From: Thalia democratica
Lineage: Eukaryota
Assembly (NCBI GenBank): GCA_965202585.1
Contig: OZ241830.1
Coordinates: forward strand, 58,218,001 to 58,282,000
Direction: 5' to 3'
DNA: 64,000 bases
A program made the position numbers and the translations under genes. Below the pieces are notes generated by a model, which was given only the letters and a program-made list of their open reading frames with translations, made no database searches and was not told the origin of the DNA. Shown here in pieces: positions 5,445-63,030 of this stretch (positions are counted from its first letter, which is position 1; each line of letters starts with the position of its first letter).

Positions 5445-8400
5445 ATGTCGTATAAAGAAAAACCCTTCTCAAAAGAGGTGGCAAAGCCAGTACTCTCAGA
5501 ATCAGACAGATTGCGTATAAAGGGTGAAGAGCCTGTCAAGGTTTCCAGAGAAGAATATAAAAAGAAAAAAGAGTTAGAAGAACAAAGAAAGCTTGGAAAT
5601 GCTCCAGCAGAGGTTGATGAAGAAGGAAAGTAAGTGAGATAAAAAATATCAATATAAAAACTATCAACATAAAATATAATATCAATAATTGCTGTATTTG
5701 TTGAATGGAAGTTATCACTTTTTTAGGCTTTGTTTTTTGATAACTAATGTTTAGCTTTTTTATATAATGTCATAGATTTTATGAAATGTAAAAGTACTAT
5801 AAAAGAAAACATGTGTTTTTTAATGAAAAGGTAAGGTAAAAGATGTATAAGAATTTTTATTAAGAATTTATTGAATACTTTTGTTTTTATTTAAACCTAC
5901 ATATTTAAAAATGACAGTTCAAGCATATCAATTATTTTATTTAAAATATAAGAATATTTAAAATCCTTAGATCACAATAAAAAATACTCCCTTTTTTATA
6001 TTTTAAGCACTTGTTTGACAATTTTGTTTTTAGTGATTTTTTTATAAGTCTTTTTATAAAAGTTAAATAATATTTTGGCATAAATAAACTTAATACAAAT
6101 TTGTTTTAAGTAACAACAAGTACTTTTTGAATAAAATAAATTAAGTATGTTTTATTGAACAACAAAAAGAAGCATTTCTCAAAAAACGTATTTAAATTTT
6201 CAATGTTTTAAAATAGAATTTTACAGTTTTTATACAGTTTATACCCAAAGATTTTAAAATACTGTTTATGATCTAGACCAGAGCTGTAAAATGCTAATAG
6301 TTATTGTGCCAAATGAGTACTGAAGGGTACAAACCTTTGTTTGCTTTAAACTAAAATTTCATATCCAAATAATTAAAAAAATTCATTTTAAGAAGTATGA
6401 TCAGACTTTAGGGCTCTTCAATTTATGTAATAAAATTAAAACACCTTAAAAGTTATGGTTTTGAAATTATCATAATAAAACACTACTGTGTCTTAAAGAT
6501 CAAGTTAAGAAAACACTTTAAAATATTTGCTGTAAATATTTGCTGTAAAAATTTTGTTTGTTTTTCAAATATAATTTTCAAGCTAAAAAATACATTGCAT
6601 ACCTACTGTTTGGCGGGCAGGAACCAATGACATGTTGCCTACCTTTATTACAAATAAACAAATTTAAAGTTATGTATATTTTTTAAAGTTTCTATACTTT
6701 GTAAAACTTTCCAATGCCATTGAAAATTGTAGTTAAAGAAGAAAAATAAGTGTGTATTATTAATACCTCTTGTGTATGGCAAATAGTTACTACTACAAGC
6801 ACATCTACAGCAAACTATACTTATTAAATTTTGAAACTTTTTTACATAAAATATATTATTTGTATTTTTAACATATATGTTTAGATTAAAGTTTAAGTAA
6901 AAAAAAGAATACAATCATTCAAGCATTTGTTTTCTTATTTAAATACTAAGCACAAATAAAAGATAATGAAGTGTTTATATATGCTTTTTTTTTTTTTTTT
7001 TTTGATAATTTTAATAAAATAGCTTGTATGTTAGCCTTATAATTTGTTCACATAAAAATGCATGTGGTACCTTTGAAATTTTTTAAGTTGTATATTAGAT
7101 TCAAAATTTTAGACGTTGTATTACACATGTTTATTAAAATTTTAAAATTATGCACATTTAGCATCCTTAGAGTATTTTAAATTTAGTTACAAACTTTAAC
7201 TGTTCAAAATATAGTTTTAATTGTTTGCTAACAAAAGATCCTAGTAAAGTAACTTCACTGGAATATAAATAAAAACAAATTATACAGTAATCTTCCTTTA
7301 TTCTACCAACATATGTTTCTGTGTGTCAACGAATCAACACACTTCAACTGGGTTCTGTAAAAAATAATTACTGTAATAAGAGAATAGAAGCATAGAATAA
7401 AGTAGGCGTATATATGTTTTCATTAAAATAGGATATATTCTACAGATAATAGTTATTAATATGTGAAATACTTAACATTAAATCCGACTGTTATAAAACT
7501 ATATGATATTTGTAATTATTAAGTCTAAAATAAATAAGTAAGCTAAATTACACAACAAAATATATATTTAAAATGAAACAGAAATTATTTAATTTACAAC
7601 ACAGAAACATATGTTGGTAGAATAAAGGAAGATTACTGTATAATTTGTTTTTAGTTACAAACTTTACAACTTTAAAACAAAAGTTTCTATATTTTTGTAA
7701 AACTACCTCTGTGATTTACTAGAAGGGCTTATTAAAGAAACATATAATTAACTAAGCTTTCTATAAAAACTAAAACTTGAAAAAAGTCATATTTTATATA
7801 GATTTATTTTTCTGTTTTACAAATGCAGCCTACGATCTTTTAGAAACTCATTATCTTTTATAATGTATGTGGTTTCTTTGGATAATTTTAAGAAAGTTAA
7901 TTTTAATAAGCCTAGTTGGAGTGACTTTGCAACACAAAAGTTCAAGTTTGTTAGCTTGTGGTGAAAATTAAATAAAAATACTTGAAAATCACTTTTGAAA
8001 AAAATATCGTTTGGTTCGAAGCATTAAATAGGCAGCTTAGGAACAATATTTAAAAAAATAAATTGGCTGATTTTTTTTTAGTTGGTCTGCATTTTTTTTG
8101 TTAAAGCTTCTGTCTAGATTGCTCAACTCAAACAAAATTAGCATTTAAGAGGGACATAGGTTGAATAAATCTGCAATACTTTTTTTATGTACTATGATTC
8201 AATTTTTTTTAAAGGTTCTTGCTTTTAGTTTCAGATAATTTAAGTTACTGAGAATAAAAAAGACAATTCAAAACTATTTTTTAAAAGATAGTTGGAGCAA
8301 TGCAGATTTGTTTAAGCTAAGTTCCTGACATCTAGTAACAAAAAGCTTATCTTCAAAAAATAAATTGTTACTAATGTCACAAAATTTGAGTTTAAATAAA

Positions 8401-11400
8401 TTTTAGTGTTAACCACAAAAAATTAAGTTTACACAACTACTATTTTTAAAAGTAAACAAGTAAAGTTTGTTGTAAAAAGTTTTTTAACTTTTGTTCCTAA
8501 TTCATGTTGCAATGCTTTGTTTCAACTATAAATTATAGAAAATGTTGCATTCTTAACGCAACCGTTGCTGGTTAATTTATTAGCAATATAAACTAAGTTC
8601 ATATTAGAAAAAATTAGAACTTAATATTTTTAAAGGGACATCAACCCCCATATCCCACAGTACATATCCACTGTCCCCTGGTACGTTGATCCCACGCAGA
8701 GAGCGTCACTCAAACACCAGCGCTGTCAGCCGGAGAAGGCCAAGCACTACAGCGGCAACAATGAGTGGTACAACAGGGGAATACCCAGTAACGCGAAAGT
8801 AGCCACCAAGTTTAGGAAGGGCGCGTGTGAGAACTGCGGCTCCATGGGCCACAAGAAGAAGGACTGCCTGGAAGTAAGTATTTTTTATCTATTAGACGTA
8901 TACTTGTTTTTTGATTGATTGCTTTTGGTCTGCTGTTTTGTTTTAGATTTAATTGTTTGATGTTTTTTGACATGTAATAAAATTTTTCAAATTCAATCTT
9001 ATCTACTAATTTATAGTTATACTTTTAGATTTTTAAATAAGCAGATTTGTATTAAAATAAGTAATACACCAACATTTTTTTTAATAAGTGTTTAAGTGAA
9101 ATGTGGTTTTTCTAGACTAAGATTGTTTATAAAAAAATGATTTCGTGAGAAGTGTTTAGTTTAAAACTTGTTTAAAGATTTTGTTGTAAGACATTGAAAT
9201 AATTGTACAACTGTTTTTACAAATCTCTGAATGCAAATACAATTTTAAAACTAACTGCAAGTTTTTGCTTTTAATTATATGAGTGCTGAGCCAACGTTTA
9301 AAACTGCTAAAAATATGTACAATTTTATTTATATGATTGCTATTTAGTCAAGAAAGTCAGTAATTTAGAAATTTTTTTAAATCAGATTTTTTTTTGTAAA
9401 GTTGTAATCTTTCTAACTATATGAATATAATAAATATAATTAAAAAACAAATTGTGCAGTAGTTATTCTTTCCATTAACAACCAACTTGAAGTGTGTTGA
9501 TTTGTTAACACACATAAACATATGTTGGTACAATAAAGGAAGATTACTGTACAATTTGTTTTTATTTATATTCCAGTGAAGTTACTTCACTAGGATCTTT
9601 TGTTAGCAAACGTTTTAACCTATATTTTTGAACAGTTATAATAAATATATGTTTTATGGTTGTTAGTAAATGTAAATTAGCTTTACATTTTTTTATAGTG
9701 AGCTTCTTCACACTTTTTTGACTTTATTATATAGATACGAACATTAAAATAAACTTTTCATATTAAGTTTTAAAATTTACTTCATTGTGTTTTTATTATA
9801 TTTTTACCAACTTTGTTTTATTTTTCACTTAAGTTTTACCAACCATCACTTAATAACTACTAATCTGTAAATTAGATGTTTTAAAATTTTGTATCAAAAA
9901 GCTTTGAACTTTTGAAGAGGGCAATGAATAATCCAACATGACTAATAGATTGTTACGTCATAATACTAAGTTTTTATGCAATTACTAGTTTCGCGCCGAA
10001 TTGACATTACTCTGAAGAAGACTTGGTGCATAAAAAACAATCAAGTCCGAAACACATGTCAAGTAATGTCTGTTTTATGTAGTATATATTTTTCTCTAGT
10101 TTGCCTACAGAGTAAAGGGCACTATAAACCAACTTTAAAACATAACATCATTTTATCTAATTTTTTATACTTTTAGTGTTAAATATCTTAAAACTAAAAA
10201 TATTATCAAAGTAGAAAAATGATTTTTTTTCTAAAACTAAATCCAAGTAGTGTTGTATAAAGTTCTAACTTCATTAAAAGCAAACTTTAATTTATATTGC
10301 ATGTCTCTTGTTTCAGTTTAATTTTTAATTAATTTTAAGTTTATTGTATATAATTTACCTGAATTTTTTTATGTTAGGAAGTGTACTGTTGTTATAAAGC
10401 TACTATGTGTAGGTTTTTGTTTGTTTTAATTTATCAAATTTTTTTGTTGTTTTATTGAAGTTTTCTTCAAAGATTGTTAATTTTCGTTGCTAACAAAACT
10501 ATTGCTTTGTGCTAAATGGTGATTTTTGTTTTAATATCATCTAAAATTTTTAGTAAATAAACATTGTTATTACAATTAGTAAAGGCCATAGGGGGTCCAA
10601 AATTTTTTTTTGGTTATGTATGAAAGCTGAAAGTATAATAAACTACAAGCCAGTTTTTATAGAATATAAAAATTTAATTAATTTCTAAAATAATTTTTTT
10701 TTGTAAAAGTTTCCAATACAAACATATAGACCGCAATTTTTTTCTCGGAAATTTATAAGTTTACCGAAATCTATATTCATTTTTTGAGCTGAAGACCTCA
10801 AATTTCTTGAAAAATTTCAATTACTTATAATTTAAAAGATTTTTAATGTTGCGATTTTAAATTTAAAAAATATAAAATTTTTAGCTAAATTAAAAAAAAA
10901 AATTTTTTTTTTTAACATTTCACTTTTATTAAAAAAAAACTCCTTTAAATCGATTTTAATAACAGCTATATGGACTTCCTGTGAAATTTCGAAGAAAATT
11001 GGTTAAAAAATTAAGAAGATAGACTTTTAGTGAAATAGTCTTTTTTCTCGTTTTTGGTTTGCGCCTTCCTTTTTTTCAAGTGGTTAAAAATGTCTGAAGG
11101 CTCAGATTAAACTCTACAAAATAAGATAAACTTGTAAAGGTCAAGGTGGATCCCCCTATGCCCTTAATCCTGTAGTTACATTTTTAGTCTGATTTTAGGT
11201 TATTTTAAACTTTAAAATAAAGTTATAAATCATCAGTGAAAAAATAAACTTAAACTATTATATAAGCTAAGGAAAATTAAATTTAGAACCATTGTGTTAA
11301 AAAAAGAATATTATTATATAAATAATAACAAAAAAAAAACCTCACAGAGACCGCGCAAAAAAGGCGCCAAATTCACCAACACCAACATCGCTCCCGACGA

Positions 11401-14400: not shown

Positions 14401-16037
14401 TTACTATCAAACTGCTTGTAGAATAATGAACATATCAATGTTAATATTATATCAAAGTTTTGTTAATTGAATTATTTTATTAGAACTTTACTTCCTTAAA
14501 TTTTTGATTATTTTAGTATTTAGTTTAGTTCTTCAATAATTTATTGGCTATTATTTATTAGTTCGTTAATAGTAAAAAGCTATATACATATTCTAAAATA
14601 TAAAAACTATTTATTAAAACAACATTATAATTTTCAATTTTTTTTATATAAAAAAGGCATAATAAAATAAGAGTTAATTGTTTCAATATTTAAAATAAAG
14701 TAGAAAAATAAAACAAACCGAACATCAGGGCAGGAAAAAGCAGTGACGAAGAGCAAGTACAACGAGGATGTGAGGATAAACAACCACACCTGCTGCTGGG
14801 GAAGCTTCTGGAAGGAGGGGTTGTGGGGGTACAAGTGCTGCCAGTCCACCATTAAGATGTCCTACTGCGTCGGATTGAAGAACAAGGAGGAAGACAAGAC
14901 GGAAGAAAAAGAGGAGAACAAAGAGGCGACGTGGCAGCAGAAGGTCGGTTTGAACGAAGTTTCAGATAAGAACGTTGTTGATCGTGTTTATATTGACGAT
15001 GTGGAAAAGTCGCTCGTGGAGCAGCACAGGGAGAAGATGAGCAAGAAGGAGAAGAAGAAACACAAAAAGAGCAAAAAGAAGAAGAGCAAGAAAAGCAAGA
15101 AGAAGAAGAGGAAAAGGGAGAGTTCAAGCAGCGATTCATCTGAGTGGGTTTTAAACTAATATTTTGAAAAAAAAAATGTTTAAAAGTTTAACTTAAAGCT
15201 GTATCATTTGTTTATTGTACTGATGAGCTCTTTAGAGCGAAACTTCTTTTGCATTGGAAAATAACATAAAAAAATTACATTATAAAAGTTAACTATTAAT
15301 ATAAATTGCAGCAGCAATTCAGACGAAGAGCCAGCCTCGAAAAAATTAAAGAAAAATAAAAACGTGAATTTGGATGATATGAGCAAGGAAGAGAGAGACG
15401 AGCTTGTTAACAGAATAATGAAGAGAGAAAAAGCGAGACAGTAAGTTTGTTTTATGATTTATTTGTTATTTAAAGGTTAACATGAATACATAAATAAAGT
15501 ATAATATACAATTCACTTTTTTTTTACCAATTGTTGTTTAAATATATTAATATTTTGTTTAATTAAAAGTATCAATATTTAAATAAAAATTACAATTATA
15601 CCATTTGTTGTGATCTAATAGTTTAACTAATTCTAATTATTTTTTTAGACAACCTGTTTTTAAATACTTAGAATTAGACAAGTTTAACATCATTATTTTT
15701 ACACTCAATGTGCAGTACAGTATGTTTCTTAAATAGATGAGAAAAAGTTAGATTTTTATTATAAATAACTTTGAAAAAACTAAACAAAGTTCAAAATTTT
15801 AACTTTTTAAAAACCACTGTCATAGTTTATTACAAAAAATTATAACTTCCACATTCAACCACTTTTATCCACACCAGGAGACGAGTTGATATGATGAGCT
15901 CATTGGACGAGAGGGATCGTCCGTACAATTCGAACAGGGGAGACGCGGAAGCCGCCATGGAACCCACTGAAGCGGAAATGGAGGCGTACCGAAAAATGCA
16001 GAAGAACAAAGACGACCCCATGTACGGGCTGTGTTGA
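5445..16037 (+). CDS. SLU7: Pre-mRNA splicing factor SLU7, 9 or 10 coding exons
   Basis: Exons: 5445-5629, 8636-8873, 11348-11581, 12632-12810, 13187-13392, 14211-14360, 14729-15143 (possible internal 66-nt intron 14944-15009), 15312-15440, 15878-16037. All junctions are GT-AG with matching phase. The translation has SLU7 hallmarks: [31 protein letters not shown], zinc knuckle [61 protein letters not shown] and C-terminal [15 protein letters not shown]. Confidence 0.97.
7198..7348 (-). repeat. Intronic repeat containing a decayed hammerhead; inverted partner of 9484-9637
   Basis: Reverse-complement homology to 9484-9637, with a partial third copy at 7596-7650. The minus strand reads GTGTGTTGA-TTCG-TTGACACAC-A-GAAA-CATAT-GTT. 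Confidence 0.8.
9484..9637 (+). repeat. Inverted partner of 7198-7348
   Basis: Direct reverse-complement alignment across about 150 bp. Confidence 0.8.
10003..10070 (+). ncRNA. Type I hammerhead ribozyme motif, near intact, SLU7 intron 2, sense strand
   Basis: Stem I is GACATTACT/AGTAATGTC with one extra A. Core CTGAAGA at 10012-18. Stem II is GACTTGG/TCAAGTC with an A.C mismatch at the core-closing pair. GAAA at 10049-52, 2-bp stem III with palindrome ACATGT, and GTC triplet (cleavage after 10060). Confidence 0.72.
10584..11163. mobile_element. Kolobok-like non-autonomous DNA transposon
   Basis: TIRs GGCCATAGGGGG/CCCCCTATGCCC flanked by TAAA and TTAA. The body is homologous to 4420-5059. 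Confidence 0.65.
12212..12578. mobile_element. Probable hAT-like MITE in SLU7 intron 3
   Basis: Repeated aaaaacctgga motifs, and an end caaccctg typical of CAGGGTTG termini. Confidence 0.45.
15211..15270 (+). ncRNA. Hammerhead core with decayed stem III in the 168-nt SLU7 intron 15144-15311
   Basis: CTGATGA-GCTC-TTTA-GAGC-GAAAC at 15220-15243 is a textbook core plus stem II. Upstream TTTATTGTA partly pairs with TAACATAAA. The NUH triplet is lost. Confidence 0.55.
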
Positions 16038-19780: not shown

Positions 19781-19853
19781 TGGTGTACGACTCGATAACC
19801 GAAAGGTTCCTTTGTACACCAGGTCCTTAGATCAAACTTTTTGAGCGATTTTT
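19781..19853 (+). repeat. Dispersed short hairpin repeat, copy 1 of 4
   Basis: TGGTGTACGACTCGATAACCGAAAGGTTCC..GTACACCAGGTCC..TTTTGAGCG. Other copies at 36995-37080 (-), 43353-43438 (-) and 57769-57847 (+). Confidence 0.8.
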
Positions 19854-21417: not shown

Positions 21418-21534
21418 CTTAATTTTACTTTTTCATTTAATGCAAACACTTCAAACAGGGGCCAAAAAAAAATTGGAGGAGGAACCATAAAATCTGCTGG
21501 TGGAAAAGTACGGAGAAGTGGAGTGTTTGGAGGC
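21418..21534 (+). pseudogene. Orphan duplicated fragment of the SLU7 intron 5/exon 6 junction
   Basis: Aligns to 14169-14286, covering the intron end (aattttactttttca..tgcaaa.acttcaaacag) plus about 76 nt of exon. There is an in-frame TAA in [25 protein letters not shown]. Confidence 0.85.
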
Positions 21535-34600: not shown

Positions 34601-37600
34601 TTTACAAGCAACTGGTATTTATAAAGTAAAAATTTTGAAGTTTTCAAGTAAAAAAACAATGCAATACAAATTTAACAACTTTTTACAATAAAAAATAATT
34701 CTAGAAAAAAAATATTAAATACTTTAACAGTTTTTATAAAACTTTATAAAAGTAGCATGAGTTTTATACAACCACGGTCCAACCTGCTCCAGACGTTATG
34801 ATTTCTTTGCTTCTGACGTTGGAAACGATTTTAACTATCTTGGAAGTGTGGGACTGCACGCTGTACTGCACGCTACCCGTGTTTAAATCGAGAACCACTA
34901 TGTTCCCACTTTCAGTGCCGCCTATCAGCAGTATCGAGTAACCGTACCTGTTGCATAAAACGTTAGTTTTTTTAAAGAAAATATGTAAGACTTTGCACTT
35001 GAAAAGTCTATGTATAAGTTTGATAAATAAAAAAATTGAGAATTTAGTGCATTATAAATAGCGCAACTATAGTATAATTCAACCTAGTTTTTCAATAATT
35101 AAACATACTTATTTAGGACGTGAAGTATTATTTTTTTAACAAAAAACACTTGCACTCACGAAAGTTTTTTTACGATGTGTTAAAGTACCAGAAGGACTCT
35201 AAATATTAAAGTATAGAGTCGAAAGATAAAAAAAAATCTAAAAAGTATTGAACGAAGACCTAACTTAAAAAAAAGAGCAAGCTGATTTCTAAAATCAATT
35301 TAAAACTCTAACTTGAATTTTCTCTTAATGTCTTCGTTTTTAACACCCAGCCTAATTTGATTCCAGGTATCATTCAACTCAGCTTCATCTACTATGTTCT
35401 CGTAAAGCTCCAAACAGGTAAGTTTTTCATCTAAAACATTAAATAATTAATGTAAATATTTGTTTTTTTTCAGTCAACATCAGTTGTCGCTTTGTATAAA
35501 AACAAGCATATGCTTGTGGTAAAAAATTTCAAATTTTTTTACAATTAAAAAAGTAAATGAATTATAATACAGAGACAAAAAATTGTATCATTAGAAAAAT
35601 AAATTATGACTGATGAACAAAGCATATGAGTAAGCTATCTTCCGACAGAACTTTTTTTTTTGATTATATAAAATTCAATTTAAAACAGGCAATAAGGCAT
35701 AGTCTTAAAACTTGACTGCATACTATCTATAAAAAAATCTATACTTATTGTGTAAACAAACAATAGTTTACATTCGCTTCAGATTTAAAGCCTTCAAGTC
35801 ATCATCAGACTAACCTAAACTTTTTGTCTTAGGAAAACTTGAAGCATAAAACTTTTAGTTCGGAAAATATTGTTAATATTTGTTAATATTTGTTTACACT
35901 ATGCACATATGTCGCTTTACTTTATTTATTAAGCATAGATAACTACCAACCAAGCTTAAAACACACTATCGAATAAAACACTTTATACGTGGATGATTAG
36001 CAGCTAATTAGTAACAGAAACTATACTTTATTTTGACGAAAAATTGAAGTGTAAAAATTTAAGTCCGAAACATATGAAAACAATTGTTTTGTTTCTACCA
36101 CAAAAACAAAGTATACATCACTTTAAACCAAATTTAAATAAAAGAACATAACATCTAATAAAAGTTTTACGTACAAAAAATCAGAAACCAATAAGCAACA
36201 GAAACCTCCATCAAATTTGAAAAGAAACTCGACGCCGGCAGGGCTCTTCAGCGTGCTGGCCCGATAAAGCCCCCCGTCACCGTAAACAGCATAAATCGAT
36301 TCCAGTGGCAGGCAGTAGACTGCGTCGACGATCTCGTTGTCATCACAACCGGCTTTCTGATCGCAAGGTGGCAGCATCGTGGTGAGTATGGTGCCGTCTA
36401 GCGGAGAAACGAGTCGCACCGATCCGTCGTTTCCGCAACACAAAACTCGGTCGACCAACTGAAAAGGATTTAGAAATTTTTGTTGTTTTTTTTGATAAAG
36501 ACAAAAACAAGTATAATAAGCAGCTTTTTTCAAGTACTATTATACATTAGCTTTTATTACTTAGAACTGTTTCGTATTGATTCAAATTTATTACATGTGA
36601 CAAAAGTTAAATAATTTATGCACAAAGGTTTAATTTATTTGTAAATACAGTTGTAAAAAAAAAACAGCAAAGTATTTATCAATAAAAACTATCGAAGTAT
36701 TTACATTTCTATATTCGTACATTTCCATTTTTTTCACTGAATAACTGTGAAAAAAAATTTATTGTATATGTGTTATTAATTTAGCACAGAGAAACGTGCG
36801 TAAATTCAATAAATCAAGTAATTTTCAAGATGTTGTTATTGCTTTATTCCAACGAGCTTGTTTTTCGCATCTTTATTATAAAGTTTATTATAAGTTGGTA
36901 AATTTTGAACATTTATTAGCAAGATTTAAGTCTAAAAATTTGCAAAAAAATTTTTGAACTAATATTAATAAGAAAATTAACTATATTGTTTATTAAACGA
37001 CAAAAAAAAATACGCTCAAAAGGTTTGGTCCAAGGACCTGGTGTACAAAAAAAACCTTTCGGTTATCGAGTCATACACCAGAACAGTTTAACGTCATGCC
37101 CAGGACATATAATCAACTCTTTTCTCTAATTACCCAATCGTAGTAAAAATTTGATGAAGATGCGTGACTTTCCATATGTCAACAAATTTGCTGGAGTAAG
37201 TAAAAAGTTTGTTGCTGTCAGAACTTGCGTACAATCCCAACAACTTGTCATCTGCTTCTATTCTATTAATTATGCTTTGTTATTAGAAAACTGCGAAAAA
37301 AACTTACTTCAACACGTAAATAGAAAATCACAGAAATTTTTGGCGCGTTATAGCCTTTTTAAGATAATGTAAGGATTATAAGCATAAAATTGAAAGATTA
37401 AGAAAAAAAATGCAAAGTGATTTATTTCAAAACCAAAACTTTAAAATCAAACTCACAAGTCAACCTCGTCAGAACTTTCTAAACTCCAAACTCTGATAGT
37501 TTTATCATAAGATGCAGACATTATGTATGGACCCTAGCAAAAAACTATATCTATTAAACTTTGTTATTTTACGCAGAAAATGTAAGTTTTTTTGAAAACG

Positions 37601-41717: not shown

Positions 41718-42745
41718 CTGATTATAAATATTTTTTATTATAACGAGCATTATAACAAATTGAAGTAATGCTAATTTATTCAGTAGTAAAAAATTAAATA
41801 ATTTTGCTTGCTTAACAATAAAAAAAACACGAACTCTTGCAAAACTTTTTTAAACTATAAACAGTAACTTAGGATAGGATCTAACATCTAATTCATGAAT
41901 TTTGATAACTTATGCTGTTGTGAGATCTAATCATAGATAAGATTGATTGTATAAGGATATATGCTTATGTAGTTTAGGTATTCCATACATCCCAGCTCTC
42001 ACTGAATGTATGAGTCTAATAACATGATAAACTGTTTGGTGGATTTTGTTTTTAATAACTTAGTGTTTTAATATATTGACAATGTTCTTTTCTGTTTTCG
42101 TCAAGGTGTCAAACTTACTAACAGGTCTTAATATTGTGAGTTTACAACTTTTGTACTGACAAAATATTTAGCAAGTTATACTAGCATATACCAAAAATGA
42201 CAACTTGCCTGGCCTGGTAGGCATCAATAATTCATTGTTTTTAATCTTAAAAATGGCCTAAATATTTTTTTTAAATTTGTTAGACAACTCTCATACCAGA
42301 GTTCTTTAAGCCAGATGTTTTGTAAAATTTCGATCAGTTGTTACACTAATGTGATTTAAATCTTAGAGATCAAAATAAAATATCTTGTTGTAAAATCGAA
42401 ACAACTGATTTTGTAAGTGAATTAATTGTTTTACTTAAGGTGTTTAGTTTCAAATAAAATAATATGCGCATCTCTACTGAGTCTATATAATATTTTAATA
42501 AAAACTGTGAAAACGTTTTGTACAAAAATTATTTAACGAAATAGAAAACTTAACATAGATACACATTTATAAATACAAAATATTTTCAAACATGTAACTA
42601 AAATAAATTATCTAAGTAAAAATTGAATTTAAATACTTTTAATTTTTAAAATAGCTTAGGAATAACAGTAAATTTTTTTGTTTAAATTTAACTTACAAGA
42701 TTAAACTAGAGTAAGTGAAACTTATTTATATTTTTTAATAAATTA

Positions 42746-42833: not shown

Positions 42834-43794
42834 AATAAATGAATACAAAAACACAAAGGTATTTATTTTCTAATTAATTAACCTTAAAAGAGCCCATAAC
42901 TTTTGTGCTTTGTTTTTTCTTCTTATATCTCTATAGCTTTTATCTTTAGCTATATACTTGGTCTCTAGCATTATCTGTTAAAACAACAATATTTAGATTT
43001 AAAGTAAACTTTGGATATTTATTTATTTTTTTTAATATACAAATTCGTTTAACAATTCAAGTTAACAAGTGTTTTAACATTAAATTGTAACTTGTTAAAA
43101 TAATAGCATAGTTATTTTTAAAACTGCTAACATTTTACTTAAAATCATAATGTCAATCAAAAATTTCTGCTTTAATTTGCTAGGGTCATTTAGATTAGTA
43201 AACACTTATCTAGCTTACTGGTAACTACGGCTCCACTTTTGGTTAATCCCCTTTTTAAAACTAAACTAGACTAGAATATATCAAGTAGAAAGCAAAACAA
43301 AAATATTTAAAGAAAACTTTAACAACGGGTTCATTTAAATAATGGTTTATTGAACAAAAACGAAAAATTGCTCAAAATTTTTAGGTTAAAGGACCTGGAT
43401 ACGCAAAAAAGACCTCTCGGTTATCGAGTTGCATACCAAACTTAATCAAAATTATAATGAGCTACAAATGAAAAAAAAAACTTTACAATCAAAATTTAAA
43501 TTCTAAAACTAAAAAATTTATAAAAATACGACTATTAAACTATACAACATTAAATATTTCTCTAAGAAAATAAAAATTTATACACACAACGCATATATCT
43601 AACATTATATACACATTAAGTATATATTAAACTCTACGTCAAAAGGTAAAGTTTCTATGTGAAATGTTTTTGATTTTGAAACTTATCAAAAATTTTAGCA
43701 AATAGTTTAACCTTTTATATAATTTAAAAATTAAAAAAAATATATTAAATTTGAAGTTTTTAATAAAAATATATGTTTATGAATTTAGACTCTG

Positions 43795-44075
43795 TTGAGC
43801 ACAAATGCCACTGAGTTTATTGGGAGAACTACGCAACGATTCCTTATAAGAAGGCACCAACATTTTAACAACGCCAAAAAAAACTGGATGATCTATGGGA
43901 CAAACAAGCCAACAAAAAGTCAATCTGCAATAGGTGAACATTTGTTAAATAACTAAGAATGCTCAAAAAACTATAACGATAATATGTTTTCCATTGTTTG
44001 TAAAGGACGTAATATGTATCATTTAAGCGTTTAAAACCTTTATTTATAAAAACTAATAAGCCAAGTTTACGCAAA
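43795..44075 (+). mobile_element. Decayed Penelope-like element GIY-YIG endonuclease fragment
   Basis: Translation EFIGRTTQRFLIRRHQHF..SQSAIGEHLLNN*ECSKNYNDNMFSIV..HLSV(frameshift)PLFIKTNKPSL matches the YIGxT/SAIxEHL/FxIL/LExLFI pattern of PLE endonucleases. It contains a stop and a frameshift. Confidence 0.8.
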
Positions 44076-44809
44076 CAATTTTTTTTAATAATTATAATTT
44101 GTTTAAATTATTGTTAATTCGCTACTAAGTTTTGTTGTTGTTGTTTAATTTAATTTTATTTAAAGAAAGTTTGAATAAGACTGTTTCCTCTTATTAAAAT
44201 TGCTATTAATGCTTTCAATTTCTAGTACTTAAGCTTTATACTTTAAATTTTGTTAAATAACTTTATATTAGCATCTTACAATTTTATTATTTTTCGGGAA
44301 CGGATTCTAAACCTCGGTTTATATACTTTACTTATATTAAACTCATACTATGATATAACCATAATTATATAAATGAAATAAAATCTTTACTATTTTTGTT
44401 AGAACAAGTTTAACTTAAAATTAATACAGATAAAAAGATAACTAAATAAAATTTAAATAAAAATTTGAGAAAAAATTCATTTTGCAATTGATTTTATTTA
44501 ATTTTTTGTGAACTTGAAATTTTTTAATCAACGTTTTTCTAAAGTTCATGTTCATTATTAGATAATTAAACAGAGTTGGGTAAAACAGTAAACTTAACAT
44601 CACACGCGATCAATTCCTATCTAATATGATTTTTCGTACGTTATTTATTTATATTTTTACTTCTTTTTAACCCTAAAGGCCTAAACCCTAACTTTAAGTC
44701 GATAAGCGATTTTACATTTGATTTCGCGAAAAAAATTACTTAAATATTACAATAAATTATAATTGAAATTTTTATCTCTGATAGTGTAGTTATAATTTAC
44801 TAATTAAAC

Positions 44810-48600: not shown

Positions 48601-51600
48601 AAATTAATTAAAAGAAAGCTACCGACCGATGGTAAGGGTTAGGGCAACAGTGATAGTAAAAATAAAATAAAAAACAAATAAAAATTACTAATAAGAAAAA
48701 ATTAATAAAAAAAAAACAAAAAAAAAACAAGTTACCAACAGAAGGTAAGGGTTAGTGGTAACAGTGAAAGTAAAAAAAAAATTTAACTAATAAAATTTTT
48801 TTATAAAAATTAAAAACTAATGAAAAAAATATTAAAAATAAGTTTCAACCCGTGCAAAAATTTATATGTGCAAAAAATTACCCTTTGTGCAAACATATCT
48901 TTGTGCAATTTAGTTCCCTCGTGCAATTTTGTCCACTTGTGCAAATTTGACACCTACCCTGTAATTTTAAGTTTTTTATAGTGTTTATCTTTAATTTTCC
49001 ACTTTTTTGTGTGTCTTTAAAGTGTAAGTGGCCCATGTTTTGATGACTTGGTCCAGTGTTGGACAATAAACTACAAATAATAATAAAATATTTTATTATT
49101 GTAATAAAACAAAAATTGAAATTCTTTACAGAACTCTGGAGAAACAACTGAAACTTATAGAGAAAGTGTTCTTTTAAAAAATCAACTTTCTAAAAGTAAG
49201 TTTAAATATGATCTGCAACATATTTTTATGTAAAAATTATTAAATAAATTATGAGATTTTAGAGTGTAGTTGATACAGATAATTGAAAAAAATAGAGGTT
49301 GTAAATATTTTTAAGGTACTTTTAATAAGAATTAGTTAAATAACTGTAATTACATACTTAATTGTTATTATTTTTAGTTTTTTATTTTACATGTATATTT
49401 TATTAACTTAATTTGGTTAAAAATTTTGATTAATTTTAAATGATTTTAAATTCTTTTAGCACAACCATTTCGTAATCAAGGAAACACCACTTCAAACCAA
49501 TTAACAAAAAACCGAAAGTATGACAAGCCTTGGTTGAAAACTACTAGACACCAAAAAAGCAAACAAGGTTTTTTCAAAAAACTTTATTTTGTTTTTGTGT
49601 TAGCTTATTTTTAACATTTAAGTTAAAATAATGTCCTAAACAGTATTTAGCTTCTTCATTTTTTACTTAAAGCTTATAGCCATATGCTTTGGTATCAAAC
49701 ATGTATGTGAAACTCTAACATATATAAATAAACAGTAAAGTGAGAAATACCACAAAAGAGTTCCTAGCCAAATATTTCTTTTAAGAATAAAGCTAAGAAC
49801 ATAAACATATTGTTAGAAATTTTAAACATAGTAAAAAGAATGTTAGTCTGTATTGTCGACTATTAGCAAATCGTTACATTTTGTATAATTTTAGTTTTAG
49901 TAGCTTAATTTTCACTAATAATAGTTTTCAGACTTGTCAAAAACCGCAGATGATGTTTTGTTACAGCATAAAGCATCTGAAACGCAACCACAGCAAATTG
50001 AAAATACTGAAGTTATTTCCATAGAAGAAAAACGTAAGAAAACTTTTGCTAAAGAAAAACAGTTTTCAAGCTCAAAGATTTTTGGTAAAAAGAATTACAA
50101 AAGACAGTATGATGAAAATGAACTTAATTGCAAAGATGGTAGTTTGAAAAATTAGTTTTTGGTTTTCTACATTTTAAAAAACTAAGCTTTACTTTTGAAC
50201 AAATTTAGTTAATATTTTTAATCATTTTAATTTAAATATAGAATACTAATTTTTAAGTCTGAAAGAAATTTTATTAAATTTTTAAAAATTACTTTGAAGA
50301 TGTTGAGAATCAATCTCAAGCTTTAACTTCTGTGAAAAAGCTTTCGGCCAAAAAATCTAAAAAGCACAAACAACAGTTACTAAAGTAAGTTAAATTGTGT
50401 AAAACATTCGTTTTTCAATATAATTTAAATTGAAAAAATTATGTATATATAAAAAGAATTGAATTCGACAAACTTAATCAACTTCCACAGAGCCCACTAG
50501 AAGGGCTTTAAAATAGTTTATTTCAAATTGTTAAATTCAAAAAACAGCAGAATATTACAAGCAATTTTATTGTTTCTATGAAACAATTGTACTGTTTTTT
50601 GAATTCGACAATTCGCACTAAACTTGTATATATGTATATTTATTAATAAAACACAACATTTTACAAATACAATTGTTTCTCTATTCTGTTAAACAGAACA
50701 GAACAGATCTATATATATATATTTATTCATTTGATTATATAAAAAAACAATAGTTTTATACGACCGTTTCGTATATGTGACATATTACCTCATATACTCA
50801 TTGGTAAATTAAAGTTTATTAAATGTTGAAAAGAAATTTAGAACTTGATAGTTTTATAATTATTATGACGTATTAATAATGAAGGTTTTTGTACAGTAAG
50901 TTAAGTTTGAAAAAATACGCTGAACTAGTTAGTTTGAAAATTTATGCATTTTGAAAAGTTTGGAAAGGTTGTATTAGAAAAATGTTTTAAACTGTATTAG
51001 AAAAAATGTTTTAAACTATTCGTCTTCGCTGCTTTGATTTAGTTTTTTAGTTAGTTTTAATTTTGCTAAAAAAGTTTTTTTTTTTTGGTTATGGATGCAT
51101 ATAAATTGTCTTTCGCTTTTCTTGTTTATTGTTATTTTCTTATCTGATTTTTCGATTTCTATTTTTTCTAAGTTACAAAGTTTGCAGCCGAATTTGGTAT
51201 TGATAAGAACGTAACACTAAACAAGAAAAGCGAAAGACAAAACATATGCATCCATTATCAAAAATACTTTTTTATAAAAATTAAAACCAACTAAATATTA
51301 AAACAAAATAAAATTGAAGCGGCAAACACGAGTATTTTATAACATTTTCCCAAAAGTCTAAAAAAATTTTTTCTAATAGCTTAAAACATTTTTCCAAAAC
51401 AACCTTTCTAAACTTTCCTAAAAAGCATAAATTAACAATCACAGCGTATTATTTCAAATTCAGCTAATCGTACAATAAACTGTACCATTACTACGTCACA
51501 ATTATTATAAAAAAATTAAAATCAAATTTCTGTTTACTATTATAATAAACTGTAACTTACTGAGGATCACATGAAATTTTACATTTCATGTGTGAAACAG

Positions 51601-54600
51601 CTGTATAAATTATAGTTTTTATGTAATTAGATAAATAATTAGCTCCAATTTAATTTGTCGAGCACTATCGACCAGAACTTTTTATAAAACCTTTAATATA
51701 TATATATATATATATTTATATATAGTTACTTTATCATGTGTAATGCGTATAGTAAATAAATAAATTTACTGACTTAAATTGTATTGTGGTTTAACAATGT
51801 GTTTTAAAAAAGAAAATGAATTTTATATTAAATTATATGTATTGGTACTAAAATTAAAGTAATGCTAAATGTTTCCTGTTTAATTTTTTATTGGTTTTAT
51901 CTATATACTTAACTTTTGTAATTACTTGAACAGTTCAGTAATAAATATGTACCCTTTTTGAACTGGGAAAGCTTAAGAAATTTTGAAATTTAAAACAGAT
52001 ATCATAATTAAAATAAGTTACTTAGTTAAAAACAAGGTAAACTTTATGGAGTGCAAAAACTTATATAGCTGAGCTAATAAGTTTATGATAACTCAAAACA
52101 ATTATCTTTTTACTAGTTCTAAGTATGTACAAACTTGCTTGTTGCTTTTACATTTGATTTATCTTCATAATTGACAACTTTTTTTAAATTTAAGATTTAA
52201 AGTTGATATACTAGTCATACAAGTGTAATTAATATAATATATTTTTATAATCCATACTTTAAAAACAGTCAACATATATTTTACCCATAATTACTATAAA
52301 ACTAAATTGTTACAGCTCTGTTTTGTTTTTTGTACAATTACTAACAGAAATGACTACTCAATTCCAAGTTATTTTTTTTAAATTCCGGATAAATCTTTTT
52401 TATTTTAGGAAAAAGCTGTTAGAATTAGAAAAATCTTCAGAAATAGTTGATATTGGTTCTGGAAGTTCCAGTAATGAAGACGATGTCATTGAAATATGTG
52501 AAGATTTTGACGAGTTAAAGAATGAAGGTGTCCTTGTAAGTTACTTTTTATAATTTTATGCATGCACGTTTTTTACGTTGTTTAAGATATTATGGGCATA
52601 GGAGAGTCCAGCATGTTTATTAAAAAAAAAACATTGACTTGTTTAGAACTATGAAGTATGAATCAGTTTTTATATATTATGATAGTTTTTATTAAGTTTT
52701 TGAAAAAATAAGCACTTTTCTTAGAGTTTCAAGATGTTTTATACATATAAAAAATTGAATTTAAATTTTTTTATTGGTATAATATGTTCTAATGACAAGT
52801 TTAGGAGTAGTTGTCTAAAATATTGTATGTTTATCTGAAAACTTTCAATATTTTTTCTTCAAGTTTTCATACAATCATTAACGTTTTATAAAGTTAATAA
52901 CATTTTAAGCTGTTCAGGCAACTTTTGGTTTTTGTAAAACTTTATAACAGTTAAATTATTTTTTATTGAGATAAATTTTTAAGACACTTACATCATATGT
53001 TTTATTATTTAGTAAGTTGAAGTATAAAGTATTTATAAATACACTATCACATGTCATGGTAACTTTAACTATTATTTGATGGTTTGAATTTAATAAATAA
53101 GTGAAAGTTCTGTGTTTTATAGAAAACCACAAAAAGTTTATTTCGAATTCATGATGTTTTAGATCCGCTAAGAAACTTATATTCGTATTTATATAACTTA
53201 AACAAATTATTATTATTTTTTTCTTTTCTTGTAGAACCCCCCTAAAGGAGGAATTCACATCAAAAGAAGAGCTGAAACAAGGACAGAACAAATAAAACTT
53301 GATCTCAATATTTCAAAGTAATAAATAACTAAAGTTACAAAAATTTTTAAGTAATTAAAATATAATGTATTCCATCCCATAACATTTGGTAACCTTTGAT
53401 AACAGCTTTATTTTACTAAGGGTAAATAATTTTAGGTTCTATTTCTTATTTTGTTTTTGATTTCTATCCAGGTTTTTAGTTCAGCCAGTATTTTTTACTT
53501 TTATTTATCTAAAAAGTATCAACAGTTAGTTTACTTATTTCAAAACTCTTACGTTTGTGTTTACTTAAATATTTTAATAACTGTTTTTTGGAAAAAAGAG
53601 CAAAATTCCTAAAATAAATTTGATGAAAGTATAATTTTTTCTAATATTATTCTTTAAACAATAGAAAATGGTTTTAGAACTATATTTATTTAAAACTCTA
53701 AAAATTTATAAATGAAATTTTCGAAAAAATCTTAAAGTAAAAGTTGATACACTGTCTATTATCAGAATACTACTCAAACAATTCCAAAAAATTATTATTG
53801 ATACTCATATAAGATAAAAATTACCTTATAGTTTTACTAGAATATTTTTTAATCATAAAATACTATACATATAATCAAACTTTAACTTTGTAACTGAATT
53901 TTTTAGATAAACGTAACACAGATTCAAACTTTTATTTTTTAATTTCGGTCGAAAATTTTGAAACTAAACCAAATACGATAAAAAAACTGTGATTTTTTTT
54001 TATAACATATAAATTCCATTATAGGGCTATTAAGTTTTTTTAATCCTAATGTTTACGAATCCTTAATATTTTTGCCAAGCAAGTTTAAAATTCGTTGCTA
54101 ACAAGCTTCACATCCAAAACTTACTCAATCAACCTTGAAACTAGTTTTAATTTAGCTGCAGAATACATATTACAAATAAACCTTCGTAAATTATCTTAAC
54201 ACTTCAGCATTGTATGGTTTACTGTTAGTTTATACAGATTAAAAAAAGTAGTCAATGCTCTTGTAAAGACAAAAACTTTGTAAATTAAGTCTTGTTGTTT
54301 AAAAATAATTGTAAGTCTCAATAGACTAAGCTATTTTATAACTTTTAACGCTGTTAATAATTTAACTGTAATGCACTGTATAATCACAATAAGTTTTAAG
54401 TTAAAAGAAAAACTTTTTTTTTATCAAATGAGCTCAACTTTTTTCAGAATTAACTAAAATGCTTGTTTTAAACAAATTTATTATTTATACTTCAGGTTTT
54501 TTGACAAACTGGGAGGGGCACTGGATAGTGATAGACCGAGTTCGAGAAACTCAAATTTCAATAACAAGTCTTATGATTACTTAGATGATATTGAAAGCGC

Positions 54601-61240: not shown

Positions 61241-61327
61241 TTTTAAATTCCAGAACATATGTTTCATTAAGACAACACTCAAAGACAAAAAAAATAGTTT
61301 TAAACCTTCAGCTGGTTCAATTTAAAA
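61241..61327 (-). ncRNA. Type I hammerhead ribozyme motif, partly decayed
   Basis: On the minus strand: 13-bp stem I TTTTAAATT[GAA]CCAG/CTGGAATTTAAAA with a 3-nt bulge, core CTGAAGG, imperfect stem II, GAAA, palindrome ACATATGT and GTT triplet. Confidence 0.6.
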
Positions 61328-61875
61328 TAAATAGCTCTTTGGTAAACAAAGATGCAAAAATTATACAAAAAACAATATGACGTAATTATTGAATGTTGTA
61401 CAGTACAAATATTCATTGCAAAAGTTAATCTTCCGTCTAAACAAACGGTTAAAAATTGACAAAAATACAATTAAGTGACTATGAATTACTTTAAAATTTA
61501 TTTTATTTCAAAAGGATCTTTTTCATATGTCGACAAAACGATACGAATTCATTTTTTTCAAATTAGGATCTGGCGGGAACTGGACCCGGATATTTTTTTC
61601 ATATCAAGATCCGGCGGGATCCGGATATCAGACAAAAATGGCAATATCCGGCCGGATCTGGACCCGGATAGTCAGTCATATTATGTCAATATGTTATATT
61701 ATATATATATATATCATAAAAATTAGTCCAGCACTAAAAAAAAAGTAAAATCTAGAGAAATCTAGGAAAATTCATGATTTTTTCAATTTTATTTAGGGAA
61801 ATTTAAGTTTTTTTTTTATAATTGCAAAAATCTAGGGATATTTAGAGAAATCTAGGGATATGGGAACCCTGTAAA

Positions 61876-62345: not shown

Positions 62346-62563
62346 TTTGGTAGTAAAGTTTTTAATTTTACAACATAAGTAAAGAGTTGAATTTCTGAAA
62401 TGTTTTTTTCATAGTTTAAATGTAAACAAATGTAAATTAGTCACGTGTACAAAATTAGCCAATCACGGTATGTGTTTAATTTTAACTGACGAAAATGACT
62501 CTTTTTAATTTACACAGGGTTTGTTTTTGAAAAATACTTTTCAGTATGCTCTTTTTTACTAAC

Positions 62564-62748
62564 TAGATCCGAATCGGCCGGATCTCTGTTAGGATCCGGC
62601 TGGAACCGGACCCGAACCTTTTTTTAAATCAAGATCCGGCCGGAACCGGATCTTTTTTTCATATCAAAACCCGGCCGGATCCGGATATCAGACAAAAATA
62701 ACAATATCCGGCCGGATCCGGACCCTGATAGTGAGTTCGGTACATCAC
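62564..62748. mobile_element. CCGGATCCGG-rich hAT-like MITE fragment
   Basis: Terminus ggtacatcactg (reverse complement CAGTGATGTACC). Homologous fragments lie at 61563-61680 and, nested in the hAT element, at about 45274-45405. Confidence 0.6.
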
Positions 62749-63030
62749 TGGTTATTACCATCTGCTATTGTCTGTGCTCTTTTTATCACCTCCCGAGTTA
62801 TTCTAAAATCAATGTTTTTACGCTTTAGGCCGCAAACATACTTTGAAAGCTCAGTTTAATTTTTGTTTACACCACCTTTAAAGGATTTTTTTGGTTAGCA
62901 TACCGGAGTTTGAACTGAGCATAAGCCGATGTAGAACTTCTCCTCAAGGTCAGAGTTAACTGTTGCCTTGTAAATAATGTTCTCCTAACGGCAGTTGCTC
63001 CCTTTCAAAATATATTTGCAGCCATCAGCG
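62749..63030 (-). mobile_element. Decayed Penelope-like element GIY-YIG endonuclease fragment, second subfamily
   Basis: Minus translation NCR*ENIIYKATVNSDLEEKFYIGLCS, then after frameshifts FKLRYAN..KSFK..N*TELSKYVCGLKRKNIDFRITREVIKRA. It is cut at 62748 by a hAT-like terminus. Confidence 0.85.

What the first reader, a model, noticed from the sequence alone, without database searches (positions are those of the whole stretch)
7198..63030. Dense set of Penelope-type hammerhead ribozyme motifs together with PLE endonuclease remnants
Seen: about a dozen motifs with stem I-CUGANGA-stem II-GAAA-stem III-NUH architecture at 7.3, 9.5, 10.0, 15.2, 18.8, 35.2, 35.8-36.1, 50.5-50.8, 51.5 and 61.3 kb. 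Most have a palindromic stem III (ACATGT, ACATATGT, ACAATTGT, ACAGCTGT, ACTAGT). Two GIY-YIG fragments lie at 43.8 and 62.8 kb. Known: PLEs and metazoan retrozymes carry minimal type I hammerheads whose palindromic stem III allows dimeric cleavage. Inference: several unrelated hammerhead-bearing PLE families with unusually long stem II have colonised this genome at high density. Every copy has at least one core lesion, which could reflect selection against cleaving host pre-mRNA.
Basis: partly seen in the sequence, partly recalled or inferred. Interest (0 to 1): 0.85.

Follow-up and report, generated by a model that had tools for sequence, protein, structure and literature searches.

The report
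Penelope-type hammerhead retroelement relics
This stretch of an AT-rich marine animal genome carries copies and decayed relics of small jumping genes that bear hammerhead ribozyme motifs, a known kind of element, and only two copies keep a complete ribozyme core.

Summary
Two type I hammerheads have every conserved core base: 10003-10070(+) and 51548-51617(+). That is 3 zero-lesion descriptor hits against 0.03 in shuffles and none with 8 scrambled cores.

Motifs with one or two core lesions are as common in shuffles, so the other sites rest on other evidence:
- Homology: 35.8(-), 36.06(+) and 50.75(-).
- A repeat family with target-site duplications: 7.3(-), 7.6(+) and 9.5(+), and probably 61.3(-).

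The 15.2 kb site is only a core plus helix II. Sites 18.8, 35.2, 50.58 and 50.68 kb are not better than chance.

The insertions look Penelope-style: 13-17 bp duplications, AT-rich or (TA)n targets, and head-to-head inverted partial copies.

The 7.3/9.5 family is highly repeated, probably thousands of copies. Five of six copies carry the same non-canonical box, CAGUUGA. Those lesions were therefore inherited, not selected at each locus. The best-preserved copy lies sense in a SLU7 intron.

The GIY-YIG remnant at 43.8 kb is confirmed. The one near 62.9 kb is not.

Long helix II and paired hammerheads on opposite strands are already published for Penelope-like elements. This scan has noted hammerhead retrozymes elsewhere in this genome.

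The parts
7182..7198 (.). Left target-site duplication of the 7.2-7.65 kb insertion (TTTAGTTACAAACTTTA)
   Evidence: An exact 17-bp direct repeat with 7650-7666.
7199..7540 (-). Copy A of the abundant repeat family. Its hammerhead-shaped three-way junction is at 7300-7358 and has the box CAGUUGA in place of CUGANGA.
   Evidence: Alignments. Fold z-score -2.5. Summed contig depth about 1.2 million against about 80 for single-copy DNA.
7594..7649 (+). Copy B: an inverted, 5'-truncated partial copy that starts inside helix II, lying head-to-head with A.
   Evidence: 59 nt at 98% complementarity to 7266-7324. It ends at the right duplication.
7650..7666 (.). Right target-site duplication
9439..9636 (+). 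Copy C of the same family, with its hammerhead-like motif at 9476-9534 (boxes AACUUGA and UAAAC). It lies sense in SLU7 intron 2 and is flanked by a 13-bp duplication, TATAATAAATATA, at 9426-9438 and 9637-9649.
   Evidence: Fold z-score -4.9.
9954..9964 (+). Upstream box TACGTCATAAT
10003..10070 (+). Type I hammerhead with all conserved core bases. Stem I is 9 bp. The core is CUGAAGA, then an A.C mismatch, then a 6-8 bp helix II. It continues GAAA, helix III ACACAUGU and C17. The predicted cut is between 10060 and 10061. It lies sense in SLU7 intron 2.
   Evidence: Rfam Hammerhead_1 scores 17.7 bits. Fold z-score -3.3. Single-copy depth.
15196..15248 (+). Partial hammerhead: CUGAUGAG, a 4-bp helix II, then CGAAAC. 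Stems I and III are weak. It lies sense in a short SLU7 intron.
   Evidence: Rfam Hammerhead_3 scores 25.6 bits, E 0.42. Seen in 1 of 300 shuffles. The fold is not hammerhead-like.
35761..35816 (-). Decayed relative of the 10.0 kb hammerhead (CUGAUGA kept, GAAGC, helix II lost). It lies sense in an intron of a WD-repeat gene.
   Evidence: Alignment A3. Reciprocal nhmmer hits with E 0.036-0.1.
36025..36088 (+). Decayed relative of the 10.0 kb hammerhead (UUGACGA, GAAAC), lying head-to-head with 35.8(-).
   Evidence: E 0.0013 to the 10.0 kb copy.
41961..42143 (-). Remnant of the N-terminal region of a PLE-type reverse transcriptase
   Evidence: tblastn with the reverse-transcriptase ORF of contig L005: 34% identity over 61 aa, E 3e-5.
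43789..44160 (+). GIY-YIG-type endonuclease remnant (..EFIGRTTQRF..RRHQH..SAIGEH..), broken by stops and a frameshift
   Evidence: phmmer finds 14 relatives, best E 3e-12. tblastn E values reach 1e-27. One relative lies downstream of an RVT_1-like ORF.
50548..50603 (+). Three-way junction with a 12-bp stem I, box CAGAAUA and GAAACAAUUGU. Whether it is a hammerhead relic is uncertain.
   Evidence: Two box mismatches is the chance level.
50727..51702 (.). A 976-bp palindromic insertion whose arms are 79% identical in the full-arm alignment. It is flanked by TATATATATATATTTAT at 50710-50726 and 51703-51719 within (TA)n.
50746..50816 (-). Left-arm hammerhead with core CCAAUGA (two lesions). Helices II and III are kept through compensatory changes. 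The box TACGTCATAAT lies at 50862-50872.
51548..51617 (+). Right-arm type I hammerhead with all conserved core bases. Stem I pairs 11 of 12. The core is CUGAGGA, then a U.U mismatch, then a 10-bp helix II. It continues GAAA, palindrome ACAGCUGU and A17. The predicted cut is between 51605 and 51606. The box lies at 51492-51502.
   Evidence: Fold z-score -3.0.
61245..61320 (-). Hammerhead with core CUGAAGG (A9 to G). Stem I is 13 bp with a 3-nt bulge. It has GAAACAUAUGU and U17. The box TACGTCATATT lies at 61374-61384.
   Evidence: The 12-mer it shares with family A is expected 0.04 times by chance.
62898..62984 (-). GIY..(x10)..YIG-like reading (IIYKATVNSDLEEKFYIGL), not verified
   Evidence: Seen by eye. 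There is no Pfam hit on the neighbouring pieces. The PLE endonuclease relatives do not match it.

Best explanation
The window holds insertions of non-autonomous, Penelope-type (PLE/retrozyme-like) retroelements that carry minimal type I hammerhead motifs. They come from at least three lineages.

Shown here: they arrived as discrete insertions with 13-17 bp target-site duplications in AT-rich or (TA)n DNA. They often form head-to-head pairs, each a fuller copy plus an inverted 5'-truncated copy. This is the scar pattern published for PLEs, whose enzyme cuts and extends both DNA strands.

Two copies (10.0 and 51.5 kb) still have the full catalytic core and good helices. The rest are decayed, except for one highly repeated lineage (7.3/9.5 kb). 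The founder of that lineage already carried a non-canonical core, CAGUUGA.

Inferred: none of these copies is expected to cleave where it sits. The motifs are single or lie on opposite strands. Helix III is a short palindrome that needs a second copy in the same RNA. The elements are therefore genomic parasites and fossils with no host role. The hammerhead fold may serve the element's RNA rather than catalysis.
For: - Core statistics.
- Folds.
- Family alignments.
- Compensatory changes between the palindrome arms: 3 double changes in helix II and 1 in helix III.
- Target-site duplications.
- The same head-to-head pairs occur in independent marine contigs L007 and L008.
- Very high repeat depth for family A in two DNA runs, and its presence in metatranscriptome contigs.
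- All four window hits to the TACGTCAYAAT box lie upstream of a hammerhead on the same strand.
- Reverse-transcriptase and GIY-YIG remnants at 42-44 kb.
- Published PLE traits: long helix II, an extra base after A9, and dual motifs on opposite strands (PMC4209133). Inverted 5'-truncated copies, (TA)n bias and a tail (PMC8557442). Catalysis is dispensable for insertion in vitro (PMC11167929).
Against: - No Rfam hit reaches gathering score.
- No hammerhead here sits next to an intact PLE ORF or in a tandem array, so the link to PLE machinery rests on insertion scars and literature.
- The palindrome arms differ by 21% overall and by about 39% in the hammerhead. This does not fit one insertion followed by neutral decay.
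- Derivation of family A from a hammerhead rests on topology, the 3' box and similarity to the 61.3 kb copy. A two-mismatch box alone is at chance level.
- GIY-YIG identity is by motif only: no Pfam hit, no PDB profile hit, and a low-confidence model with pLDDT 61.
- Self-cleavage was not tested.
Confidence: 0.8

Rival explanations
1. All the motifs are chance matches to a loose descriptor in AT-rich DNA.
For: With 1-2 lesions allowed, the real counts equal those in shuffles and with decoy cores. Rfam gathering finds nothing. This does hold for 18.8, 35.2, 50.58, 50.68 and 41.1 kb.
Against: Zero-lesion hits number 3 against 0.03 expected, with 0 in decoys. The motifs show reciprocal homology, compensatory changes, a shared upstream box, and repeat-family membership with target-site duplications.
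Confidence: 0.04
2. The inverted repeats at 7.2-9.6, 35.8-36.1 and 50.7-51.7 kb are terminal inverted repeats of DNA transposons, MITEs or foldback elements. Their hammerhead resemblance is incidental.
For: Inverted arms of 59-470 nt. The long hairpin at the palindrome centre scores as a microRNA-like fold.
Against: The duplications are 13-17 bp and vary in length, which is typical of target-primed reverse transcription and not of a fixed transposase cut. The arms are unequal: 342 nt against 56 nt. Solo copies such as C have their own duplication. A 5' truncation point recurs at the core box.
Confidence: 0.07
3. This is the first reader's view: the core lesions are kept by selection because active hammerheads would cut host pre-mRNAs.
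For: Most copies here are lesioned, and several lie in introns of SLU7 and a WD-repeat gene.
Against: The most intact copy is sense-intronic (10.0 kb). In a second individual or close relative (run X3), one stem I pair of it is broken, which looks like drift. The family A lesions are identical in copies from other contigs. The sample of about 10 copies is too small for a test of sense against antisense.
Confidence: 0.06
4. The sense-intronic motifs at 10.0 and 15.2 kb are domesticated ribozymes that regulate SLU7 pre-mRNA, like the intronic hammerheads of amniotes.
For: Both lie on the sense strand within SLU7 introns, and both have intact core boxes.
Against: The 15.2 kb motif lacks stems I and III. 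The 10.0 kb copy has a minimal helix III, is single, and shows a pair-breaking change in run X3. No RNA ends were seen, although only contigs were available.
Confidence: 0.03

Closest known systems
Minimal type I hammerheads of Penelope-like elements (Cervera and de la Pena 2014, PMC4209133)
   Same: - The order stem I, CUGANGA, long helix II, GAAA, short palindromic helix III, H17.
- An unpaired base next to helix II.
- High sequence variability between families, with compensatory changes.
- Paired motifs 100-700 bp apart on opposite strands.
- Most copies are solo and dispersed.
   Different: - Here the unpaired base is often a 1x1 mismatch (A.C, U.U, A.A), not a single 5' bulge.
- Stem I is long (9-25 bp) where the published one is 4-5 bp.
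- No copy here sits in a pLTR next to an intact ORF.
Metazoan non-LTR retrozymes (Cervera and de la Pena 2020, PMC7229834; Li et al. 2026 preprint, 10.64898/2026.07.22.740005)
   Same: A small non-coding unit of about 340 nt, very high copy number, a hammerhead-type motif, transcripts in RNA data, and a proposed dependence on PLEs.
   Different: There are no tandem arrays in this window. The abundant family has a non-canonical core. The preprint reports depletion from introns in vertebrates, whereas several copies here are intronic.
Canonical type I hammerhead (Rfam RF00163, Schistosoma/newt satellite type)
   Same: The 15.2 kb motif has the canonical CUGAUGAG, a 4-bp helix II and CGAAAC.
   Different: The loop-loop tertiary contact cannot be recognised. 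Stems I and III are degenerate. All scores are below gathering.
Autonomous Penelope-like elements (reverse transcriptase plus C-terminal GIY-YIG)
   Same: Remnants of a reverse-transcriptase N-terminal region and of a GIY-YIG-like domain. Relatives of the latter have two cysteines between the IY and YIG motifs, and one relative shows the order reverse transcriptase then endonuclease.
   Different: In the window the two remnants lie on opposite strands about 1.7 kb apart, are heavily broken, and are not adjacent to any hammerhead.

Membership tests
Hammerhead ribozyme, type I | Conserved core C3 U4 G5 A6 G8 A9 / G12 A13 A14 / A15.1-U16.1 / H17 | tested here: met
   Met at 10003-10070 and 51548-51617. 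Not met at the other sites, which carry 1-3 changes.
Hammerhead ribozyme, type I | Three helices around the core, with stem I open | tested here: met
   The minimum-free-energy folds keep stems I and II at 10.0, 51.5, 7.3 and 9.5 kb, with z-scores from -2.5 to -4.9. Helix III is only a palindrome.
Hammerhead ribozyme, type I | Rfam gathering score | tested here: not met
   17.7 bits against 34 at 10.0 kb. No hit at 51.5 kb. 25.6 bits against 48.5 for the type III model at 15.2 kb.
Hammerhead ribozyme, type I | Site-specific self-cleavage | not testable with these tools
   Only assembled contigs were available. No molecule ends were reported.
PLE minimal hammerhead | Helix II of 6 bp or more, with an extra base between A9 and 10.1 | tested here: met
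   Helix II is 6-10 bp. One unpaired base lies on each side at 10.0, 51.5, 7.3 and 61.3 kb.
PLE minimal hammerhead | Palindromic 15.2-16.2 / loop 3 | tested here: met
   ACAGCUGU, ACAUAUGU and ACGGUCGU (the last pairs with a G.U). ACACAUGU is imperfect.
PLE minimal hammerhead | Location in the pLTR of an element that encodes reverse transcriptase and GIY-YIG | tested here: not met
   No ORF remnant lies next to any motif. The nearest remnants are at 42-44 kb.
PLE-mediated insertion | Variable target-site duplication, an inverted 5'-truncated partner, an AT-rich or (TA)n target, and a one-sided tail | tested here: met
   Duplications of 17, 13 and 17 bp. Head-to-head pairs occur at three loci here and in L007 and L008. 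The right palindrome arm carries about 45 nt more tail than the left.
Non-LTR retrozyme | Tandem units delimited by active hammerheads | tested here: not met
   There is no tandem array of these units in the window.
GIY-YIG endonuclease (PLE type) | GIY and YIG motifs with conserved R, H, E, and two Cys inside the core | tested here: inconclusive
   The consensus of 14 relatives reads IYxFKCHCxSxYIGRTSQRFxxRRxQH..SAIGEH. There is no Pfam hit and no PDB profile hit. The model has pLDDT 61.

The most novel reading that the evidence does not exclude
The highly repeated 7.3/9.5 kb family keeps an invariant hammerhead-shaped three-way junction in 5 of 6 sampled copies from different contigs. That junction has a long stem I, a 9-bp helix II, GAAAC and a palindromic helix III. 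Its 5' box, however, is fixed as CAGUUGA (U4 to A, A6 to U). Many copies start exactly at that box. If the fold is conserved for a non-catalytic job, such as recognition or priming by the PLE enzyme, this would be a natural case of a ribozyme fold kept after loss of catalysis. If CAGUUGA is instead an unrecognised active core variant, that would be new in its own right.
Probability: 0.25. Interest if true: 0.55.

Novelty: new member of a known kind. Interest (0 to 1): 0.35.

Why it matters
It adds a marine invertebrate genome to the many animals in which Penelope-type hammerhead elements are abundant. The window gives clean examples of the insertion scars. It also shows that loose hammerhead descriptors in AT-rich DNA need family-level evidence, because lesioned matches alone are at chance level. 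The abundant family with a fixed non-canonical core agrees with in vitro work showing that ribozyme catalysis is dispensable for PLE insertion. It offers a natural test of what the fold is kept for.

Tried and rejected
- Rfam at gathering score found nothing, and at E-value thresholds gave only two weak hammerhead hits.
- A covariance model of my own was dropped. MAFFT misaligned the 5' boxes across families and alignments cannot be edited by hand.
- The U3-A8 covariant core (UUGANAA) gave 2 hits against 0.55 in shuffles, which is not significant.
- A pattern scan of the JGI metagenome contigs for family A found nothing.
- The protein atlas gave no usable lead for either GIY-YIG piece.
- Pfam found no GIY-YIG domain in the window pieces or in 10 of the 14 relatives.
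- A PDB profile search found nothing.
- The AlphaFold model was too poor (pLDDT 61, core below 50) to justify a fold search.
- Look-ups of earlier scan findings by sequence were blank.
- The family A upstream region does not carry the TACGTCA box, judged from the majority letters.
- The TACGTCA at 18.94 kb has no convincing hammerhead downstream.

Full report
**Setting.** The window is 26% G+C. It is eukaryotic, with GC-rich exons in AT-rich introns.
- A SLU7 gene runs on the + strand. Its exons lie at 5442-5630, 8634-8890 (zinc knuckle), about 11.3, 12.6, 13.1, 14.2, 14.7-15.16, 15.29 and 15.85 kb.
- A WD-repeat gene runs on the - strand from about 26.8 to 38 kb.
- Public runs that hold the sequence include two coded organisms and marine metagenomes.
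- Earlier notes of this scan call the genome a tunicate and list many hammerhead retrozyme findings elsewhere in it. I did not test the organism's identity.

**Is the observation more than chance?**
- Rfam finds nothing at gathering score. At permissive thresholds it gives Hammerhead_3 at 15196-15248 (25.6 bits, E 0.42) and Hammerhead_1 at 10006-10067 (17.7 bits in a 151-nt search).
- My own type I descriptor was stem I, CUGANGA, helix II, GAAA, a palindromic or hairpin helix III, then H17. With zero lesions it gave 3 hits, against 0.03 per dinucleotide shuffle and none with 8 scrambled cores.
- With one lesion it gave 3 against 1.8. With two it gave 27 against 21.4 +/- 4.8.
- A structure-first scan took strong three-way junctions that end in GAAA and scored the 5' box afterwards. 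It gave 2, 1 and 3 junctions with 0, 1 and 2 box mismatches. Decoy boxes gave 0, 0.28 and 2.96.
- The motif alone therefore supports 10.0 and 51.5 kb, and marginally 61.3 kb. Anything with two or more lesions needs other evidence.

**The two intact-core copies.**
- 10003-10070(+) reads: a 9-bp stem I, CUGAAGA, an A.C mismatch, a 6-8 bp helix II with a 12-16 nt loop, GAAA, ACACAUGU, C17, one bulged A, then the stem I return strand.
- 51548-51617(+) reads: stem I with 11 of 12 pairs, CUGAGGA, a U.U mismatch, a 10-bp helix II, GAAA, the perfect palindrome ACAGCUGU, then A17.
- Both fold into stems I and II, with z-scores of -3.3 and -3.0.
- A U.U mismatch at the base of helix II is known in axolotl hammerheads (PMC7229834). 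An extra base after A9 and a long helix II are the published hallmarks of hammerheads in Penelope-like elements (PLEs; PMC4209133).
- 'Every copy has a core lesion' and 'unusually long stem II' therefore do not hold as stated.

**Homologous decayed copies.**
- 36025-36088(+) and 35761-35816(-) align with the 10.0 kb motif box for box. They are reciprocal best nhmmer hits with E 0.0013-0.1. They lie head-to-head.
- The 51.5 kb copy is the right arm of a palindrome. In the full-arm alignment its arms are 79% identical.
- The left-arm motif, 50746-50816(-), has core CCAAUGA. Against the right arm it shows three fully compensatory pair changes in helix II and one in helix III.
- The hammerhead segment differs by about 39%, while the arms overall differ by 21%. 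This points to divergence under structural constraint, not decay after a single insertion. I cannot explain how the two arms came to sit inside one pair of flanking repeats.

**The abundant family.**
- Copies A (7199-7540, -), B (7594-7649, +) and C (9439-9636, +) belong to one family.
- Laying contigs of two DNA runs on 6900-11700 gave summed depths of 0.55-1.4 million over A and C, against about 80 for single-copy DNA. Contigs of two metatranscriptomes also cover the family. The tool warns that summed depth is not a copy number, so I say only 'highly repeated, probably thousands of copies'.
- The 10.0 kb hammerhead is single-copy. It is present in the second coded organism with one change that breaks a stem I pair.
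- Spurious ORF calls led to four more family copies in marine metagenome contigs.
- In the six-copy alignment, five copies read ACC-CAGUUGA-A, then helix II, then A-GAAAC-AUAUGU-U. The 3' half is invariant.
- The layout is exactly that of a hammerhead with the extra base, but U4 is A and A6 is U. By classical mutagenesis (my own knowledge) this should be inactive.
- The lesions belong to the family, not to the locus.
- Many copies begin right at this box. There is a recurrent breakpoint at 7354, and 5' ends at unit positions 187-189 in L007 and L008.
- The 61.3 kb copy (CUGAAGG) shares the flanks GAACCAG and GAAACAUAUGUU with this family. That 12-mer is expected 0.04 times by chance (alignment).

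**Insertion scars.**
- A plus B form one 451-bp insertion between exact 17-bp repeats.
- C sits between 13-bp repeats. The palindrome sits between 17-bp repeats inside (TA)n.
- Head-to-head pairs occur at three loci here and in two independent contigs.
- The right palindrome arm carries about 45 nt more tail than the left.
- These features match published PLE behaviour: inverted 5'-truncated partners, (TA)n preference and a one-sided tail (PMC8557442); cleavage and extension of both strands; and insertion that does not need ribozyme catalysis in vitro (PMC11167929).

**A shared upstream box.** TACGTCAYAAT, allowing one mismatch, occurs four times in the window. Each occurrence lies about 48-77 nt upstream of a hammerhead on the same strand, at 10.0, 50.75, 51.5 and 61.3 kb. 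The count alone is near chance (2.5 expected), but the placement is not. Its role is unknown. It resembles a CRE half-site, which is my own reading.

**Coding remnants.**
- The piece at 43789-43953(+) has 14 relatives with E of 0.001 or lower, the best at 3e-12. By tblastn these cover 43789-44160 with E values down to 1e-27.
- The consensus of the relatives is IYxFKCHCxSxYIGRTSQRFxxRRxQH..SAIGEH. This is a GIY-YIG pattern with two cysteines inside the core, described as typical of PLE endonucleases (PMC8557442).
- One relative lies downstream of an ORF with a sub-threshold RVT_1 match in contig L005. A piece of that ORF matches 41961-42143(-) at E 3e-5.
- Pfam, a PDB profile search and an AlphaFold model did not confirm the fold.
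- The 62.9 kb 'GIY-YIG' is a by-eye reading only.

**Sites not supported.**
- 18.8 kb has GAAAC plus a hairpin but no 5' box.
- 35.2 kb has a 7-bp hairpin between CAGAAG and GAAAG and no stem I.
- 50.68 kb has three box lesions.
- 50.58 kb has a 12-bp stem I but the box CAGAAUA.
- None of these four exceeds chance.
- 15.2 kb has a core and helix II that shuffles rarely produce (1 in 300) but no stems I or III. It is a relic or a coincidence.

**The selection idea.**
- Sense-intronic copies are B, C, 10.0, 15.2 and 35.8. Antisense copies are A and 36.06.
- The best-preserved copy is sense-intronic.
- No copy has a tandem partner on the same strand. Published tests found that single minimal motifs do not cleave (PMC4209133).
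- There is therefore nothing here for selection to remove, and the sample is far too small for a test.

**Verdict.** These are real, ordinary members of a known kind.

Noticed in passing
window 37007-37107 (+) and 19781-19853 (-): A repeat of about 100 nt with nested hairpins (GGTCC..GGACC, CCTGGTGTA..TACACCAG). It matches, at 85-88% identity, a segment 300-400 nt downstream of the GIY-YIG-like ORF in marine contigs L001-L004. It may be part of the same PLE's 3' region.
   Followed up: partly
window 10603-10763 and 10925-11246: Two further very high-copy repeats just upstream of SLU7 exon 3, with summed contig depth of 6e4-1.9e5 against about 80. They are also present in metatranscriptome contigs. 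A 74% identical copy of part of them lies at 4822-4907. No convincing hammerhead was found in them.
   Followed up: partly
window 7354 (family A unit position about 187): A recurrent breakpoint and 5' end of family copies exactly at the start of the 5' core box. It is seen in the contig joints and in two independent marine contigs. It is not the predicted ribozyme cut site.
   Followed up: partly
window 58943-60725: ORF pieces that resemble gag- and integrase-C-terminal regions of an LTR retrotransposon (for example ..ALLKQRNTPDP..). The only Pfam hint is a weak PNMA match.
   Followed up: no
window 46237-46516, 48477-48959 and 55572-55835: Units of 107-118 nt repeated in tandem at 48.5 and 55.6 kb, with inverted partners at 46.3-46.5 kb. 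This is a separate repeat family rich in TTGCAC/GTGCAA words.
   Followed up: no
window 61582-61676 and 62642-62736: A 95-nt direct repeat (89% identical) full of GGATCCGG/CCGGATCC palindromes. Rfam weakly matched it to a Bacillus sRNA (35.8 bits, below gathering), which is surely spurious. It flanks the unverified GIY..YIG reading near 62.9 kb.
   Followed up: no
window 41129-41025 (-) and 41135-41192 (+): CTGATGA occurs back to back on both strands inside a small inverted repeat. The minus-strand hit has zero core lesions, but its stems are weak and helix II has a loop of about 60 nt. I treated it as chance.
   Followed up: partly
window 50727-51702: The palindrome arms differ more in the hammerhead (about 39%) than elsewhere (21%), with compensatory changes, yet the whole unit sits between one pair of 17-bp (TA)n-type repeats. 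One insertion followed by decay does not explain this.
   Followed up: partly
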